A DNA stretch of 64,000 nucleotides, from sequence record MW845759.1, one strand, 5' to 3'. The number at the start of each line of letters is the position of its first letter. The first letter of the stretch is position 1. Below the pieces are notes generated by a model. The model was not told the DNA's origin and made no database searches. It saw nothing but the letters and a program-made list of their open reading frames with translations. The position numbers and the translations under genes are program-made. Positions 37,054 to 43,935 of the stretch are shown here, in pieces.

Positions 37054-37114
37054 AAAATACATTAGTGCGCAAACTTATGCGCACTAAACACTTTATTTTT
37101 TTGTGGAGTAACTC

Positions 37115-37546: not shown

Positions 37547-38587
37547 ATGAAACAGTATCAAGATTTAATGGCTCGCGTAATGAGCGAAGGTGTACCGAAG
37601 AAAGACCGTACAGGTACAGGCACACTTTCTATCTTTGGGCATCAGATGCGTTTCAACCTGCAAGAAGGTTTCCCACTGGTGACCACGAAGCGTTGCCACT
37701 TGCGCTCGATTATCCATGAACTGCTCTGGTTCCTGCAGGGTGATACCAACACCAAATACTTAGAAGATAATGGTGTCACTATTTGGCGAGAGTGGGCTGA
37801 CGAAAATGGTAACCTTGGCCCGGTCTACGGAAAGCAGTGGCGTGCATGGCCGCATCACAAAGTTATTGTAGCGGATGATAAAGAAGGGTTGAGTAAAGCA
37901 ACCTCGAAAGGAGGTGAATGGGTTGCGGGTGGTGACGATTTAATGAACGGGTCTGCCACGCCGTATGTGTACCGTTTTGAAACTGACCAGATTGCTAAAG
38001 TCATGGACCAGTTAAAGAACGACCCGGATAACCGCCGTATCATTGTTAGTGCATGGAACGTAGCTGACCTTGACGATATGGCCTTAGCGCCGTGCCACGC
38101 GTTCTTCCAGTTTTATACCCGTGAGTTGGATTTTGATGAGCGCTTGCGTTGGTTAGAAGTAAATAACTTCACGCAATATTGCAAACCGACATTTAGCAAT
38201 GACTCCGTAGATGATCTGGATAAACTTCACTCTCGACTCGACGAGTTTGATGTTCCACGTCGTTCATTATCCTGTCAGCTCTATCAGCGTAGTGCCGATG
38301 TGTTCTTAGGCGTACCGTTCAACATCGCATCTTACGCATTACTGATTCACATGTTTGCACAGCAAGCGAATATGGCAGTCGGTGACTTCGTTTGGACTGG
38401 CGGCGATGTGCATCTGTACTCCAACCATCTCGAACAGGCGCGCACTCAGTTAGGCCGTAGTCCTCGTCCGCTGCCTAAGTTGATTATCAAACGTAAGCCG
38501 GACTCTATCTTCGATTATAAGTTCGAAGACTTCGAGATTGAAGATTACGACCCGTATCCCGCAATCAAAGCGCCGGTCGCGATATGA
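37547..38587 (+). CDS. thyA: thymidylate synthase with two insertions
   Basis: [49 protein letters not shown] and IKAPVAI C-terminus. Confidence 0.97.
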
Positions 38588-40230: not shown

Positions 40231-40764
40231 ATGAGTGATAAAATTGTACCGTTTGCCCCACGTCCTGCGAACGGGGCAGTAGCAGACAAACCAGCAGTCG
40301 AAGGTGATGGGGTAGTGGCCGAGTTTAAAGACTACGACACTGGCCGTATTGAGGTGCCTCAACCTGACGGGTCAACCAAGTCGATTATCTTCAGTATCGA
40401 TATGGTCGATTGGTGGATGGCGTTGTCTGAGCGGTTCATCGCTACCATGCCTGAAGGCCCGTACGGACGAGCCTTCGTTGGTTTGAACAAACTCGAGCAT
40501 GCTTGCACGGATGTCTTTACGAACCGTAAGCGGCATCTCGAAATGGAAATCACCCGCCAGCAGTTTGAACAGTTCGTTCAGGCGGTGCCGTGTCAACTGA
40601 TGGAAACAGAACACCGTACCTGTCAGTTGAGTGTGGCCGAGTTTGCGGTTAAGTACGCAGAAGACACCGTCTGCGCTAAAAACATTCCGGCAGACCTCGT
40701 GTCAGCCATTTTCCTCTATCAAGTGGATGGGGAACGTTTTCGTATCCACTACGTCGAACAGTAA
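40231..40764 (+). CDS. hypothetical protein, 177 aa
   Basis: Abuts the upstream stop. Confidence 0.75.
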   Translation: MSDKIVPFAPRPANGAVADKPAVEGDGVVAEFKDYDTGRIEVPQPDGSTKSIIFSIDMVDWWMALSERFIATMPEGPYGRAFVGLNKLEHACTDVFTNRKRHLEMEITRQQFEQFVQAVPCQLMETEHRTCQLSVAEFAVKYAEDTVCAKNIPADLVSAIFLYQVDGERFRIHYVEQ

Positions 40765-40773
40765 GGGTTTATA

Positions 40774-41022
40774 ATGTCAGAACTGAATGCACAACAAGCA
40801 GTCGATGGTATCAAGCAAGATATCATTAAGTCTTACGAAGGTCGCGCCACGTCCCTGACCGGTGACCCAGTTGATTTAGGTCGTGGCCAAACGACGCAGT
40901 TCCAACATGCAGACGACTCCGGTTTCTCTATTCCGGGTCTTGACCCTGATGCTGTTGCGCCGGACGGAGTTGACGCCGGTGCAGACGATGAAGGCTGCGA
41001 GGGCGGCGCATGCAAGATTTAA
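40774..41022 (+). CDS. 82-aa acidic protein ending in an NrdA-like redox tail (DDEGCEGGACKI)
   Basis: AAGGG RBS; C-terminus resembles the E. coli RNR alpha C-terminus (DDGCESGACKI). Confidence 0.75.
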   Translation: MSELNAQQAVDGIKQDIIKSYEGRATSLTGDPVDLGRGQTTQFQHADDSGFSIPGLDPDAVAPDGVDAGADDEGCEGGACKI

Positions 41023-41486
41023 AAGCGCATCAACTAACGGCTCAACACTTCGCGGAAAAACTGGGTATGGTATACCGGCCAGATATTAGCCAAGGTACGA
41101 CTTATTATAACCATAACCGTGAACCTATTCCGTTCGAAGAGGCCCGTAAACTGTCTCCACTGTGCTGGCAGCATGTAAGTGATAGCGTGTTTACCCAGCG
41201 CCGTATCGTGTGTGCTGCTTTACGCTTCCCAGAACTGGATTTAATTATTCCCGGCGCCCGTCACTACAGTGCGGATATCCACGCACTGATGGACCGTTTA
41301 CAAGCGTTAGGTGCATTACCGCCTAAGAAGCAGCAAGCGGTTGGCGATAACCAAGGTTTCCTCGACAACTTTGGCGGCTACTGGAACCGCGAAGATGCGC
41401 TGTTGATTGCCCGTTCTGCTCATCAGTTAGATGGTAAAGAGAAATGTGGTAGTGAGCGCGAACTCTTTTCTGAAGACCTGTATTAA
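41010..41486 (+). CDS. conserved phage hypothetical protein
   Basis: IVCAA..GARH..QGFLDNFG.YWNREDA pattern recalled from a widespread phage family. Confidence 0.7.
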   Translation: MQDLKAHQLTAQHFAEKLGMVYRPDISQGTTYYNHNREPIPFEEARKLSPLCWQHVSDSVFTQRRIVCAALRFPELDLIIPGARHYSADIHALMDRLQALGALPPKKQQAVGDNQGFLDNFGGYWNREDALLIARSAHQLDGKEKCGSERELFSEDLY

Positions 41487-41492
41487 TCTCTC

Positions 41493-41512
41493 CCCCGCTT
41501 CGGCGGGGTTTT
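41493..41512 (+). terminator. intrinsic terminator (UUCG loop)
   Basis: ccccgc-ttcg-gcgggg-tttt. Confidence 0.75.
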
Positions 41513-41520
41513 ACTTATAA

Positions 41521-42420
41521 ATGGAAATAACGAAAATGACCCGTCAAACGTTTCAAGTGCCCGTAGCGTATACCATCATCAAACCGACCGATGGCGTAAT
41601 GGGCGATCTTATCCCTTCCATCAACAAATGGTCAGCGCAGAAGACCGCACATCTTGCAGGACCCGGCGTAAAACTGGAAGCGCTGAAAGAGATCGCCATT
41701 AACAACGAAACTAAACAATGGCGCATTACTGGTCGCGAAGCTATTAACGGCGACGTGTGGTTCTGGATGCCGCCGACGGCGTTGGTGTTTGACCATGAAG
41801 TCGTGGGTCAGACTACCTACCCGCGCGATGTCCCACTGTTCACCATTGCAGAGTGCGTCGATAACGTAGTTGGCTGGTCTACCGCACGCGGCATTCTGGA
41901 AAACGGACGCTGGGCTACACAGGTCACCAAGTTCTATGAAGAAGACGGTGAGGCAGCAACCGGTATCAGCAAAACCAAACGTCAGTACATCATGGACGGC
42001 ATTGGTGACGCGCTGGTTGTGATGGTAAACGTCATCAGTCTGGCGGGCGGTAATGCGAAAGCGATCGCGCTGGAAGTAGAACGTCTGCCTGAGCGCCTGC
42101 TGCCGTATCCGTCCGGTGATGCTCACCGCCTGTTCCACAAAATGCGTCTGTACTCAACCCTGATGCACGAAGCACTGTACATCGGTTGTGACCTGCTCGG
42201 TCAACACGACGGTAAAGGCTATCAGCTGGACACCCGTCAGGATGACATCTACCGCGAGTTTGAGAAAAACATGCGTGAAGCCATCTGCTATGCAAATGCA
42301 CTGGCTAATGCGTACGACATGACGCTGGAGCAATGCTTCTCGCTGGCGTGGGACGAAATCAAAGACCGTAAAGGTTTTCTGAACGCTGACGGTATCTTCA
42401 TCAAAGAAGCCGATGCGTAA
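41521..42420 (+). CDS. MazG-like nucleotide pyrophosphohydrolase with extra N-terminal domain
   Basis: KFYEEDGE, MDGIGDALVV and LEQCFSLAWDEIKDRKG (all-alpha NTP-PPase motifs). Confidence 0.75.
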   Translation: MEITKMTRQTFQVPVAYTIIKPTDGVMGDLIPSINKWSAQKTAHLAGPGVKLEALKEIAINNETKQWRITGREAINGDVWFWMPPTALVFDHEVVGQTTYPRDVPLFTIAECVDNVVGWSTARGILENGRWATQVTKFYEEDGEAATGISKTKRQYIMDGIGDALVVMVNVISLAGGNAKAIALEVERLPERLLPYPSGDAHRLFHKMRLYSTLMHEALYIGCDLLGQHDGKGYQLDTRQDDIYREFEKNMREAICYANALANAYDMTLEQCFSLAWDEIKDRKGFLNADGIFIKEADA

Positions 42421-42486
42421 AAAACAACAATAACAACTGGGCGATGCGTTATGTGTCGCCCCTTTTATTTTTTTGAGGATTCAACG

Positions 42487-43935
42487 ATGAATATCATCAT
42501 GGAGTGGTATAACCTCCTGACCGACTCGATGAAAGCATACCCTGCCCTACAAGCAGCTTTCTTAACGGTGATGTCGGGTGGTGTAATGGCAGCAGTGGGG
42601 TTTGCTTTAGTGCGCCTACCTCGCTCAGTCGCCACCTTCTTTCGTAATCAGTGCCTCACCTCTTTAGTCTTCAACACAGCGTCTTCCGGTTGGTCGGACT
42701 ACAACCAGATGCAATACGTGGCCTTCATTAAGTGGTTCTCGAAGAATCGCTGGTTTGGCTGGTCGCGTACTATTACTTTTGATTCAGATGGTCGCAAAGA
42801 TGGCGATGGGGTCGGGCCGGGTTTAGGTCGCCACTTCTTCTTCCATAACTGGCGTCTGTTTATCTTTGCCATTCACGAGATGGACTCGCAGGGCACGAAC
42901 AGCCAGAAATATAAAGTTAGCCTGTCTTGTGTGGGCCGCTCGAAGAAACCGATTTACGCGGTAATGGAAGAGTTCATGGTCAAACCTGACCGTGAGAACC
43001 GTATCGGGGTTTACCGGAACGGTACGGATGGGTGGAACTGGGTCACCTACGCGAACAAACGTTCTCTGCGCTCGGTGATTATGTCACCGGAGCTGGAAGA
43101 AGATTTAGTCGGTTCCATGACGAACTTCATTAATAACGAAGCGTGGTATCGTGAACGCGGCCTGAACTACAAACTGACCTATCTGCTCTACGGTCCTCCG
43201 GGCACCGGTAAAAGCTCACTGGGTCGTGCGCTGGCTTCCCACTTTAACCGTGACCTGTATATCCTCAGTCTGTCCGAGTCCTCAGACCTGCTCACTTTGT
43301 TGCAAAACGCCAAAGGTGGAATGGTGCTGATTGAAGATATCGACGGATTCAGTGCGGCGCGTAAACGTTCCTCGAAGAAGAACCAAGTCGAGTCTTTGAA
43401 CTCTCCGAAGTCATCTGTACAACCGATGAAATTCGACGGTAATGGCGAACAGATTGCAGAGTCTCAGTCGCCGTCTAAGAACCTCGAAGACATCATGGCT
43501 GAATGGGGTGGGATGAACACGTCAGCGCTGCTGAATGCGTTAGACGGCGTTGTAGGGTTGGATGACGTGATTATCCTCCTGTCAACTAACCATCCGGAGA
43601 AACTCGACCCTGCTCTCATTCGTGACGGTCGTGTGGACATCCGTGTGGAAGTTGGTTTCCTGCGTTCTGCTGAGATTCGCCGCTACATTAATCTGTTCTT
43701 CCCAGACTACGTAATCCCCGAAGGGATGACCTTTGCCGATATGCCGGGTTGTACAGTTCAGCGTCACTTCATGGAGAACAAAAACAACCCTGAAGGTTTT
43801 GTGCAGGCGTTGTTGGATGCATCAGACGGCGGTAATTTCACGACCAGTCCGATTCGCCCAGAACTTGCTTTCAGTGAAGCAAACAACCGTTATCTGGTCG
43901 ACCCGGCTGCGCCTAAGGAGGCCGTCAATGCTTAA
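42487..43935 (+). CDS. BCS1-like membrane-anchored AAA+ ATPase
   Basis: N-terminal TM; GPGLGRHFFF; WYRERGLNYKLTYLLYGPPGTGKSS; LIEDID; LLNALDG; TNHPEKLDPALIRDGRVD. Confidence 0.85.
   Translation: MNIIMEWYNLLTDSMKAYPALQAAFLTVMSGGVMAAVGFALVRLPRSVATFFRNQCLTSLVFNTASSGWSDYNQMQYVAFIKWFSKNRWFGWSRTITFDSDGRKDGDGVGPGLGRHFFFHNWRLFIFAIHEMDSQGTNSQKYKVSLSCVGRSKKPIYAVMEEFMVKPDRENRIGVYRNGTDGWNWVTYANKRSLRSVIMSPELEEDLVGSMTNFINNEAWYRERGLNYKLTYLLYGPPGTGKSSLGRALASHFNRDLYILSLSESSDLLTLLQNAKGGMVLIEDIDGFSAARKRSSKKNQVESLNSPKSSVQPMKFDGNGEQIAESQSPSKNLEDIMAEWGGMNTSALLNALDGVVGLDDVIILLSTNHPEKLDPALIRDGRVDIRVEVGFLRSAEIRRYINLFFPDYVIPEGMTFADMPGCTVQRHFMENKNNPEGFVQALLDASDGGNFTTSPIRPELAFSEANNRYLVDPAAPKEAVNA

What the first reader, a model, noticed from the sequence alone, without database searches (positions are those of the whole stretch)
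40774..41022. Stand-alone mimic of the ribonucleotide reductase alpha redox tail (…DDEGCEGGACKI-COOH)
Seen in sequence: an 82-aa acidic, likely disordered protein with its own RBS whose last 12 residues are DDEGCEGGACKI. Established: E. coli class Ia NrdA ends DDGCESGACKI, and its CX4C pair (C754/C759) shuttles electrons from thioredoxin/glutaredoxin to the active-site disulfide, a step that can limit turnover. No nrdA body is present in the window, and the upstream genes are unrelated. The gene sits in a nucleotide-metabolism neighbourhood (thyA 3 kb upstream, MazG-like 0.5 kb downstream). Inference: the phage makes a diffusible RNR tail that (a) re-reduces host NrdA in trans to boost dNTP supply without encoding an RNR, (b) completes a tail-less phage NrdA encoded elsewhere (split enzyme), or (c) acts as a decoy for Trx/Grx or the RNR active site. 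I know of no described system of this kind.
Basis: partly seen in the sequence, partly recalled or inferred. Interest (0 to 1): 0.88.

Follow-up and report, generated by a model that had tools for sequence, protein, structure and literature searches.

The report
Free-standing ribonucleotide reductase tail mimic
A small, floppy phage protein ends in a near-exact copy of the electron-carrying tail of the bacterial enzyme that makes DNA building blocks, although the phage has no such enzyme; it belongs to a widespread, undescribed family found in many phages and in Neisseria-type bacteria.

Summary
Window 40774-41022 (+) encodes an 82-aa acidic protein (pI 4.05), predicted disordered, with its own ribosome-binding site. 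Its last 11 residues match the CX4C redox tail of E. coli class Ia NrdA.

A profile of this protein's relatives, searched against the whole PDB, hits only NrdA C-termini and the NrdA tail peptide.

The window is Erwinia jumbo phage pEa_SNUABM_38 (Derbicusvirus). I found no RNR of any class in its full genome, nor in Derbicus or SPN3US. This argues against the 'split phage NrdA' reading.

The gene is not a one-off. It belongs to an uncurated family:
- 85 clusters at 50% identity and at least 393 proteins, median about 48 aa.
- Members occur in several unrelated phage groups and on Neisseriaceae chromosomes.
- Both cysteines, their spacing and the C-terminal position are invariant in all three alignments; 174 of 189 retrieved proteins end in the motif.
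- dN/dS is 0.05-0.36.

The tail is a portable module. It occurs fused to a deoxyribonucleotidase and a nucleotide pyrophosphohydrolase, and it usually sits among dNTP-metabolism genes.

Best reading (inferred, about 0.45): a trans-acting dithiol tail that plugs into the host thioredoxin/glutaredoxin-to-NrdA relay. Whether it boosts, damps or tethers is open. No publication describing it was found.

The parts
40774..41022 (+). 82-aa acidic, disordered protein (stop codon included); member of phrog_24014/14561/38753
   Evidence: purifying selection
40763..40767 (+). Shine-Dalgarno AAGGG, 6 nt before the ATG; kept in Derbicus, CR5 and L011
40846..40875 (+). Conserved block 1 (residues 25-34, ATSLTGDPVD); specific to the Derbicus-like subgroup
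   Evidence: S27 L28 T29 G30 D31 P32 invariant in 13 sequences; absent from short members
40930..40974 (+). Conserved block 2 (residues 53-67, IPGLDPDA...GVD); corresponds to the family-wide hydrophobic/acidic motif and V-E-G-G-V-D
40987..41019 (+). Tail module, residues 72-82 (D-x-x-C-x-x-G-A-C-K-I-COOH), with Cys75 and Cys80; matches the class Ia NrdA redox tail
40231..40764 (+). Upstream neighbour, 177 aa, phrog_9376, function unknown; same reading frame as the tail ORF, separated by TAA plus 9 nt
   Evidence: AF2 model unusable
41010..41486 (+). Downstream neighbour, 158 aa, phrog_839 (CR5 note: 'similar to Arn.3'). Its ATG (41010) and GAGGG (40999-41003) lie inside the tail codons, which suggests translational coupling
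41521..42420 (+). MazG-like nucleotide pyrophosphohydrolase; the gene most constantly linked to the tail ORF in jumbo phages
37547..38587 (+). Thymidylate synthase ThyA, in the same terminator-bounded block (hairpins at 37062-37087 and 41493-41508)

Best explanation
The ORF encodes a translated, intrinsically disordered mini-protein. Its functional part is a detached copy of the C-terminal dithiol tail of E. coli-type class Ia ribonucleotide reductase alpha (NrdA). The phage has no RNR of its own, and the tail keeps every residue that is conserved in NrdA tails. It therefore most likely engages the partners of the host tail. The proposed cycle has three steps. Host thioredoxin or glutaredoxin reduces the tail. 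The tail then exchanges with the active-site disulfide of host NrdA. It leaves as a disulfide to be re-reduced. [quoted passage not shown] The upstream acidic/hydrophobic motifs would act as docking elements. Shown: the gene, its conservation, the purifying selection, the specific likeness to the tail, the absence of a phage RNR, and the link to dNTP-metabolism genes. Inferred: the partners, the thiol exchange, and the sign of the effect. I lean towards support of reduction rather than blockade.
For: Tail identity and specificity. A profile of 20 diverse family members searched against all PDB sequences returns 14 hits at E up to 10. All 14 are class Ia NrdA C-termini or the 25-residue NrdA tail peptide solved in complex with glutaredoxin (1qfn_B), matched end to end, E 0.0012-0.05.

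Census. In a pattern census of IMG/VR, the 80 listed loci carrying this terminal motif split into 43 NrdA genes, 36 non-NrdA ORFs that are mostly small, and 1 locus cut at its end. The unconstrained positions have the same residue spectrum in both groups.

Conservation. Both Cys, their spacing and the C-terminal position are invariant in alignments A2, A3 and A4. 174 of 189 retrieved proteins end in C..GACK[IL]. Keeping the resolving Cys as well fits a cycling dithiol better than a dead-end blocker.

Selection. dN/dS is 0.05-0.36 with saturated dS.

No phage RNR. None was found in three complete genomes from two genera, whereas the RNR beta subunit is conserved in more than half of jumbo phages (PMC13282480).

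Context. The gene sits next to ThyA and MazG-like genes in jumbo phages. Other contexts are dNMP kinase and ThyX, dCMP deaminase and ThyA, and NrdD. Natural fusions join the tail to a 5'-3' deoxyribonucleotidase and to a nucleotide pyrophosphohydrolase.

Hosts. Named hosts of the cultured jumbo phages are all Enterobacterales. The bacterial carriers are Neisseriaceae. Solved NrdA chains of both groups carry the same tail type (E. coli; 7mdi). The CX4C tail is a minority type among class I RNRs (PMC9669993).

Established mechanism of the cis tail: PMC11903788.
Against: There is no experimental or structural evidence for any partner, and the tools cannot model complexes. NrdA's own tethered tail has a large local-concentration advantage, so a free copy may add little. 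Fusion to hydrolases is not what a pure electron shuttle predicts. Neisseriaceae keep an intact NrdA tail and still carry the gene. In Neisseria and Eikenella it sits between iscS and iscU, which points to possible non-RNR clients. The nrdA of the actual host, Erwinia amylovora, was not read; E. coli served as proxy. The synteny with ThyA and MazG in jumbo phages is largely inherited, so it counts as few independent observations.
Confidence: 0.45

Rival explanations
1. Competitive blocker or decoy, working like Sml1. The mini-protein occupies the tail path or active-site entrance of host NrdA, or soaks up thioredoxin/glutaredoxin. This damps host dNTP synthesis, for instance to favour salvage of host DNA or to stay below dNTP-sensing defences.
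For: The protein is small, acidic and disordered, with extra conserved docking-like motifs. It is fused to or adjacent to enzymes that lower (d)NTP or dNMP pools: MazG-like, deoxyribonucleotidase, and a YfbR-like HD neighbour. The DRT2/4/9 defences are triggered by the dNTP rise driven by phage NrdAB (bioRxiv 10.64898/2026.10.27.754916). Sml1 competing with the R1 tail is my own recollection and was not checked here.
Against: RNR-less jumbo phages with 224-240 kb genomes should need host RNR output. A blocker does not need both cysteines, yet both are invariant. There is no homology to Sml1-type proteins; Pfam returns no family.
Confidence: 0.2
2. Docking tag or adaptor. The tail is a short linear motif that tethers phage nucleotide-pool enzymes to host NrdA or to thioredoxin. 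In the stand-alone form, the N-terminal motifs bind the phage enzyme, for example the MazG-like neighbour.
For: The module is portable. It occurs at the C-terminus of a deoxyribonucleotidase (P0161), a nucleotide pyrophosphohydrolase (P0182), a 300-aa phrog_10453 protein (L084), a zinc-ribbon protein next to NrdD (L093) and other carriers. A MazG-like gene follows the tail ORF in 17 of 20 jumbo-phage loci. The tail ORF appears translationally coupled to its neighbour.
Against: Fusions are rare: a few among 85 clusters. The MazG link is mostly inherited synteny. The MazG-like domain of P0182 is not detectably related to the window's MazG-like protein. No interaction data exist.
Confidence: 0.15
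3. A thioredoxin/glutaredoxin-reducible dithiol that serves a client other than RNR, for example persulfide or Fe-S chemistry at IscS/IscU, or phage radical-SAM/Fe-S enzymes. The NrdA-like tail would only be the handle recognised by the reductases.
For: In Neisseria and Eikenella the gene lies between iscS and iscU in the iscR-iscS-X-iscU-iscA operon. Derbicus and SPN3US each encode two radical-SAM proteins. The NrdA tail peptide alone is a glutaredoxin ligand (1qfn_B).
Against: The isc linkage is not general. In Wielerella the gene is upstream of polA, and other genomes have usp/purM or mnmG/yfbR contexts. Phage contexts and fusions point to dNTP metabolism rather than Fe-S assembly.
Confidence: 0.12
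4. The missing tail of a split phage RNR, as in genes-in-pieces NrdA of phage Aeh1 or the split NrdJa/NrdJb.
For: There is precedent. Split NrdA of phage Aeh1 is functional (PMC2988022). NrdJb carries the Cys-bearing C-terminal part as a separate chain (PMC9669993). Split NrdA ORFs were also seen in the census.
Against: No NrdA, NrdB or NrdD was found in the full genomes of pEa_SNUABM_38, Derbicus and SPN3US, and no Pfam RNR domain in the large unannotated ORFs. No NrdA/NrdB was found in any held locus with a small tail ORF. No listed contig carries both a free tail and an NrdA ending in this motif.
Confidence: 0.02
5. A decaying remnant of a lost nrdA 3' end, or a chance resemblance.
For: The DNA hit to E. 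coli nrdA is only 28/32 nt, E 0.9. A single-sequence phmmer search against the PDB misses NrdA.
Against: dN/dS is 0.05-0.36 with saturated synonymous sites. The start codon and RBS are conserved. There are 85 clusters across unrelated phages and bacteria. The pattern occurs in none of 100 shuffles.
Confidence: 0.01

Closest known systems
C-terminal redox tail of E. coli-type class Ia RNR alpha (NrdA; CX4C, the minority tail type among class I)
   Same: Same terminal motif D-D-G-C-x-x-G-A-C-K-I at the free C-terminus, on an acidic disordered stretch. The profile search returns only NrdA tails.
   Different: No catalytic barrel and no YY radical-transfer motif. It is a separate gene with its own RBS in a genome without any RNR. 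It carries extra conserved motifs (IPGLDP..., V-E-G-G-V-D) that the NrdA tails in the census lack.
Split class II RNR NrdJa/NrdJb, and genes-in-pieces NrdA of Aeromonas phage Aeh1
   Same: The RNR function is spread over separate polypeptides. In NrdJb the Cys-bearing C-terminal part is its own chain (PMC9669993; PMC2988022).
   Different: In those cases the catalytic partner is encoded alongside, and NrdJb is a folded IscU-like plus zinc-finger protein. Here there is no partner gene, and the protein is a 36-90 aa disordered peptide.
Sml1/Spd1/Hug1/Dif1-type small disordered regulators of eukaryotic RNR (own knowledge, not checked here)
   Same: Small, disordered proteins proposed to act on the large subunit. 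Sml1 is reported to compete with the R1 C-terminal tail.
   Different: No sequence relation (Pfam returns nothing). Those regulators do not copy the tail's cysteine pair. They are cellular checkpoint targets rather than viral or bacterial mini-proteins.
NrdA tail peptide in complex with glutaredoxin 1 (PDB 1qfn chain B)
   Same: A free 25-residue tail peptide is a competent glutaredoxin ligand in vitro. The family profile aligns to its last 15 residues.
   Different: That peptide is a synthetic fragment used as a tool. Here nature encodes the free tail as a gene.
Glutaredoxin domain fused to NrdB in Facklamia ignava (PMC6187632, abstract seen)
   Same: Shows that components of the RNR redox relay are evolutionarily modular.
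   Different: It is the opposite event: fusion of the reductant to RNR, rather than release of the tail from RNR.

Membership tests
Class Ia RNR alpha (NrdA) C-terminal redox tail, as a homologous or mimicking segment | Two cysteines with CX4C spacing at the extreme C-terminus | tested here: met
   Cys75 and Cys80 of 82; invariant in alignments A2, A3 and A4
Class Ia RNR alpha (NrdA) C-terminal redox tail, as a homologous or mimicking segment | Flanking consensus D-D-G-C-x-x-G-A-C-K-I-COOH shared with solved NrdA chains | tested here: met
   9 of the last 11 residues are identical to E. coli NrdA. The family profile against the PDB hits only NrdA tails, E 0.0012-0.05.
Class Ia RNR alpha subunit (NrdA) as an enzyme | Catalytic barrel (Pfam RNR large-subunit domains) and YY radical-transfer motif upstream of the tail | tested here: not met
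   No Pfam or NCBIfam family. BLASTP aligns only the last 21 residues.
Class Ia RNR alpha (NrdA) C-terminal redox tail, as a homologous or mimicking segment | Thiol-disulfide exchange with thioredoxin/glutaredoxin and with the NrdA active-site cysteines | not testable with these tools
   No complex modelling or biochemistry is available
Split RNR (NrdJa/NrdJb-like or genes-in-pieces NrdA) | A tail-less catalytic subunit encoded in the same genome | tested here: not met
   tblastn and Pfam are negative on the complete pEa_SNUABM_38 genome; tblastn and the record annotation are negative for Derbicus and SPN3US
Sml1-type disordered RNR regulators | Small, intrinsically disordered protein | tested here: met
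   pLDDT 58, pTM 0.18
Sml1-type disordered RNR regulators | Sequence membership in a known regulator family | tested here: not met
   No Pfam family at E up to 0.1
PHROG families phrog_24014, phrog_14561 and phrog_38753 (all 'unknown function') | Profile match over most of the profile length | tested here: met
   E 9e-37, 4e-10 and 2e-9
Acidic Fe-S accessory proteins of the isc operon (IscX/CyaY-like) | Profile membership, or constant isc-operon context | tested here: not met
   No Pfam or NCBIfam hit, including the Neisseria member. The isc context holds only in Neisseria and Eikenella.
Acidic DNA-mimic anti-restriction proteins (Ocr/ArdA/Arn-like) | Profile membership or a folded DNA-mimic structure | tested here: not met
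   No family hit; predicted disordered

The most novel reading that the evidence does not exclude
The NrdA tail is used as a transferable short linear motif, an 'RNR-tail tag'. Phages without an RNR, and Neisseriaceae, attach it to a bare peptide, a MazG-like pyrophosphohydrolase, a deoxyribonucleotidase or a zinc-ribbon protein. This plugs those carriers into the host class Ia RNR / thioredoxin-glutaredoxin relay. The virus would gain direct control over host dNTP output, up or down, without encoding an RNR. That would possibly avoid the dNTP surge that DRT-type defences sense when phages bring their own NrdAB.
Probability: 0.2. Interest if true: 0.9.

Novelty: new variant of a known kind. 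Interest (0 to 1): 0.76.

Why it matters
The re-reduction half-cycle of class I RNR is the least understood part of the enzyme's turnover. The tail is invisible in most structures, and its partners differ between lineages (PMC11903788). A natural, abundant, free-standing tail would be a ready-made probe of that step.

It would also be a previously unrecognised way for RNR-less viruses to reach into host dNTP supply. This would be a clear case of short-linear-motif mimicry of a host enzyme by bacteriophages.

The family is present in the Erwinia, Salmonella and Cronobacter jumbo phages that are studied for biocontrol. It also occurs as an overlooked 42-aa gene inside the isc operon of Neisseria. 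It has no curated family and no literature that I could find.

Tried and rejected
- **Single-sequence phmmer of the ORF against the PDB:** no NrdA hit because the match is too short. It was rescued by a family profile.
- **tblastn against phages:** the low-complexity filter masks residues 57-82, so it reports only residues 1-56.
- **Curated libraries:** Pfam and NCBIfam return no family.
- **Homology upstream of the tail:** the MAFFT alignment of the whole ORF to the last 99 residues of NrdA suggested similarity there, but BLASTP does not support it. I do not claim homology beyond about 21 residues.
- **NrdB-tail mimic idea:** I considered that the N-terminal acidic/hydrophobic motif mimics the NrdB C-terminal tail, which I read from L001. 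The resemblance is one of composition only, so I dropped it.
- **Thioredoxin/glutaredoxin in the phage:** a CxxC motif scan of Derbicus ORFs found no convincing redoxin. This is a weak negative.
- **Calls made by eye that did not hold:** I read a dCMP-deaminase in the ~60-kb phages, but Pfam did not confirm it. I read the N-terminus of P0182 as MazG-like; Pfam missed it, PHROG confirmed a nucleotide pyrophosphohydrolase, and it is unrelated by BLASTP to the window's MazG-like protein.
- **Identifying the ~60-kb phage group in GenBank:** megablast and tblastn found no match.
- **AF2 of the upstream neighbour:** a 5-sequence alignment gave pLDDT 36, which is unusable, so no fold search was run. 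I also ran no fold search on the tail protein, because a low-confidence model gives meaningless matches.
- **Literature:** seven searches found no description of stand-alone NrdA tails or of the Neisseria iscS-iscU small ORF.
Full report
**What is there.** Window 40774-41022 (+) is an ATG-started ORF of 82 codons ending in DDEGCEGGACKI and TAA. An AAGGG Shine-Dalgarno lies 6 nt upstream. The product has pI 4.05, with 16 acidic and 5 basic residues and exactly two cysteines, Cys75 and Cys80. AlphaFold2 on a 30-sequence alignment gives pLDDT 58 and pTM 0.18, with only a low-confidence N-terminal helix. The protein is best described as disordered. The back-translated tail pattern occurs once in the window and in none of 100 shuffles.

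**Where the window comes from.** The window is 100% identical to Erwinia phage pEa_SNUABM_38 (MW845759.1, 224,179 bp, Derbicusvirus), with window position = record position minus 62,000. Its relatives are Derbicus, EarlPhillipIV and Cronobacter phage CR5. Their annotation lists several separate 'RNA polymerase beta subunit' genes. The ORF lies in a + strand block bounded by terminator-like hairpins at 37062-37087 and 41493-41508. That block starts shortly before thyA (37547-38587) and ends with the gene at 41010-41486. A MazG-like pyrophosphohydrolase (41521-42420) forms the next unit.

**Is it really the NrdA tail?**
- I fetched E. coli nrdA from a RefSeq genome shown by a tool (L001). It ends in DDGCESGACKI.
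- BLASTP of the ORF against full-length NrdA aligns only the two extreme C-termini, 11/21 identical, pairwise E 8e-5.
- A profile of 20 diverse family members searched against all 177,635 distinct PDB sequences returns 14 hits at E up to 10. All are class Ia NrdA C-termini (E. coli; 7mdi) or the 25-residue NrdA tail peptide of the glutaredoxin complex 1qfn. All are matched end to end, with E 0.0012-0.05.
- In IMG/VR, a scan for D..C..GACKI followed by a stop gave 95 stretches. Of the 80 listed loci, 43 are NrdA genes (tblastn hit at the motif), 36 are non-NrdA ORFs that are mostly small, and 1 is cut at the locus end. The residue spectrum at the unconstrained positions is the same in both groups.
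- The likeness is therefore specific and not a matter of composition.

**It is a family, and it is under selection.**
- Orthologs in Derbicus (gp116), CR5 (CR5_113) and 11 metagenomic proteins keep three blocks: ATSLTGDPVD, IPGLDP[DE]A..GVD and the tail. Everything between them varies and carries indels.
- Shorter members of 36-62 aa in other jumbo phages keep only the last two blocks. These include SPN3US gp032, pEa_SNUABM_1, Stratton, Parshik and SPAsTU.
- Across ten jumbo-phage orthologs, the last 31 codons have saturated synonymous sites but dN of 0.04-0.48, giving dN/dS 0.05-0.36 wherever dS could be estimated.
- The ORF matches three PHROGs, all labelled 'unknown function'. It matches nothing in Pfam or NCBIfam.
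- An exhaustive HMM search of 1.84 billion representatives finds 85 clusters at E up to 0.001. Almost all are 35-120 aa, and the match ends at the C-terminus.
- Of 189 retrieved proteins, 174 end in C..GACK[IL]. Median length is 48.5 aa, and the median acidic excess in the last 45 residues is 12.
- The family-wide core reads: acidic/hydrophobic D-phi-D-x-phi-D, then V-E-G-G-V-D, then 5-8 mostly acidic residues, then C-x-G-G-A-C-K-I.

**Who carries it.**
- Several unrelated phage groups carry the gene:
  - the syntenic jumbo phages of Erwinia, Salmonella, Escherichia, Proteus, Dickeya and Cronobacter;
  - a group of ~60-kb metagenomic phages;
  - a group with a family A DNA polymerase and a 5'-3' exonuclease;
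  - a phage with a T7-type primase-helicase;
  - a phage with dCMP deaminase and ThyA.
- Unexpectedly, the family is also chromosomal in Neisseriaceae.
  - In Neisseria and Eikenella a 42-48-aa member sits between iscS and iscU.
  - In Wielerella it is upstream of polA.
  - In other genomes it lies between usp and purM, or between mnmG and a YfbR-like HD gene.
- A solved NrdA chain that aligns to the tail through its last residue (7mdi) shows that a full NrdA tail can coexist with this tail type.

**The tail is a portable module tied to dNTP metabolism.**
- In 17 of 20 jumbo-phage loci a MazG-like gene follows the tail ORF, directly or after one or two genes. ThyA lies within 4 kb in 16 loci. 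This is largely inherited synteny.
- Independent contexts add dNMP kinase and ThyX in the ~60-kb phages, dCMP deaminase and ThyA, and a zinc-ribbon-plus-tail ORF directly upstream of a class III RNR (NrdD).
- Natural fusions place the module at the C-terminus of three different carriers:
  - a 5'-3' deoxyribonucleotidase (P0161; phrog_2643, E 3e-15);
  - a nucleotide pyrophosphohydrolase (P0182; phrog_671, E 2e-30);
  - a 300-aa phrog_10453 protein, which is a separate gene two positions upstream in SPN3US-like phages (L084).

**No RNR in the phage.**
- I tiled the complete genomes of Derbicus, pEa_SNUABM_38 and SPN3US.
- tblastn with E. coli NrdA, NrdB and YfaE was run on all three, and with a phage NrdD on pEa_SNUABM_38 and SPN3US. 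Nothing approaches significance. In pEa_SNUABM_38 the sole NrdA hit, at E 0.8, is the tail ORF itself.
- Ten large unannotated ORFs of pEa_SNUABM_38 have no Pfam hit.
- None of the held loci with a small tail ORF contains NrdA or NrdB.
- No listed IMG/VR contig carries both a free tail and an NrdA ending in this motif.
- The RNR beta subunit is conserved in more than half of jumbo phages (PMC13282480), so these phages are the RNR-less minority.

**How it most likely works.**
- Established: in class I RNR the cysteine pair on the flexible alpha tail re-reduces the active-site disulfide and is itself reduced by thioredoxin-type proteins. Catalysis and re-reduction are separated across the two halves of the complex (PMC11903788).
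- Established: the CX4C form is a minority tail type typified by E. coli (PMC9669993).
- Inference: a free copy that keeps every conserved tail residue, including both the attacking and the resolving cysteine, should be recognised by the same partners. It should also be able to cycle between dithiol and disulfide.
- I therefore rank first a diffusible, trans-acting tail in the host thioredoxin/glutaredoxin-to-NrdA relay (about 0.45). I lean mildly towards supporting reduction, because these phages depend on host RNR and a mere blocker would not need both cysteines.
- The rivals are:
  - an Sml1-like blocker or decoy (0.2);
  - a docking tag that tethers nucleotide-pool enzymes to NrdA or thioredoxin (0.15), which the fusions favour;
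  - a reductase-dependent dithiol for a non-RNR client such as IscS/IscU (0.12), which the Neisseria context favours;
  - a split RNR (0.02);
  - a relic (0.01).
- None of the partner assignments is shown. The tools cannot model complexes.

**Comparison with what is known.**
- The closest relatives in kind are the cis tail of NrdA itself, the split class II NrdJa/NrdJb, and the genes-in-pieces NrdA of phage Aeh1 (PMC9669993, PMC2988022). In the split systems the RNR function is divided between chains, but the partner is encoded alongside.
- Eukaryotic disordered regulators such as Sml1 are similar in kind but unrelated in sequence.
- The synthetic tail peptide of PDB 1qfn shows that a free tail can bind glutaredoxin.
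- The ORF is not a member of the NrdA enzyme family, because it has no barrel. It is a member of three uncharacterised PHROGs.
- I found no paper describing stand-alone NrdA tails in phages or the Neisseria iscS-iscU small ORF.
- Recent work shows that DRT2/4/9 defences are triggered by the dNTP rise caused by phage NrdAB. This gives a possible selective reason for RNR-less strategies, but the link is speculation.

**Limits.**
- The nrdA of the real host, Erwinia amylovora, was not read; E. coli served as proxy.
- RNR absence was tested genome-wide in three phages only.
- Class II RNR was excluded only through Pfam on the ten large unannotated ORFs of pEa_SNUABM_38; for all other ORFs, and for Derbicus and SPN3US, it rests on the record annotation.
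- Much of the gene-context evidence in jumbo phages is not independent.
- The AF2 model of the upstream neighbour failed.
- A short-motif slip is declared under 'tried and rejected'.

**Verdict.** The feature is real, conserved and specific. It is a detached, portable copy of the class Ia RNR redox tail, carried by RNR-less jumbo phages, other phages and Neisseriaceae, and it is undescribed and of unknown mechanism. I rate it a new variant of a known kind, interest 0.76.

Noticed in passing
window 40999-41012: The start codon (41010) and a GAGGG ribosome-binding site (40999-41003) of the downstream phrog_839 gene lie inside the codons for E76-C80 of the tail. In the Derbicus group the tail DNA therefore also serves as a translation-initiation region. 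The 13-nt overlap is kept in Derbicus and CR5.
   Followed up: partly
window 40231-41022: The upstream 177-aa gene and the tail ORF are in the same reading frame, separated only by TAA plus 9 nt. The same spacing is found in Derbicus, CR5 and L011. There is no evidence of readthrough. In L084 a different upstream protein is truly fused to the tail.
   Followed up: partly
L116:8085-8210 (N. meningitidis H44/76, CP002420.1); also L120, L121, L131: A 42-48-aa family member sits between iscS and iscU in the isc operon of Neisseria and Eikenella. GenBank annotates it as a 69-aa hypothetical protein that overlaps the end of iscS, which is probably an over-extended start.
   Followed up: partly
P0161, P0182; L084:79-1146; L093:458-670: The tail module occurs fused to a 5'-3' deoxyribonucleotidase, a nucleotide pyrophosphohydrolase and a phrog_10453 protein. 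It is also fused to a zinc-ribbon protein encoded directly upstream of a class III RNR (NrdD).
   Followed up: partly
window 37547-38587: ThyA is 346 aa, and its Pfam match is split into two stretches (residues 2-193 cover profile positions 1-156 of 266). This implies an insertion of several tens of residues relative to ordinary thymidylate synthases. It is shared by Derbicus, CR5 and SPN3US-like phages (337-373 aa).
   Followed up: no
window 42451-43935: A 494-aa AAA+ ATPase with a BCS1 N-terminal domain (Pfam AAA E 8e-18, BCS1_N E 2e-9) lies just downstream of the MazG-like gene. The Derbicus and CR5 records annotate an HslV-family peptidase a few genes further on. That is an unusual pair for a phage.
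   Followed up: no
L034, L083, L046, L072, L064, L053, L061, L051, L079 (IMG/VR): Many viral NrdA ORFs that end in the tail are only 166-484 codons from stop to stop and are not cut by the locus end. This suggests frequent split or interrupted nrdA genes (genes in pieces, introns or endonuclease insertions) in T4-like phages.
   Followed up: no
L050, L040, L030, L052 (IMG/VR 'viral' contigs): Some IMG/VR contigs look like bacterial chromosome rather than virus. L050 carries an IscS-type cysteine desulfurase (Pfam Aminotran_5) directly upstream of a Neisseria-type 42-aa member. L040, L030 and L052 carry 761-aa NrdA ORFs whose last 45 residues equal the E. coli sequence.
   Followed up: no
MW845759.1 (L124-L127): Every CDS listed in the fetched parts of the GenBank record of pEa_SNUABM_38 is labelled 'hypothetical protein', including clear ThyA, MazG-like, polymerase and structural genes that are named in Derbicus.
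   Followed up: no
Derbicus 132692-134927 (L008); SPN3US 140024-142139 (L134): Both RNR-less jumbo phages encode two adjacent radical-SAM proteins of unknown role. These are potential Fe-S clients, which bears on the rival 'non-RNR client' reading.
   Followed up: no
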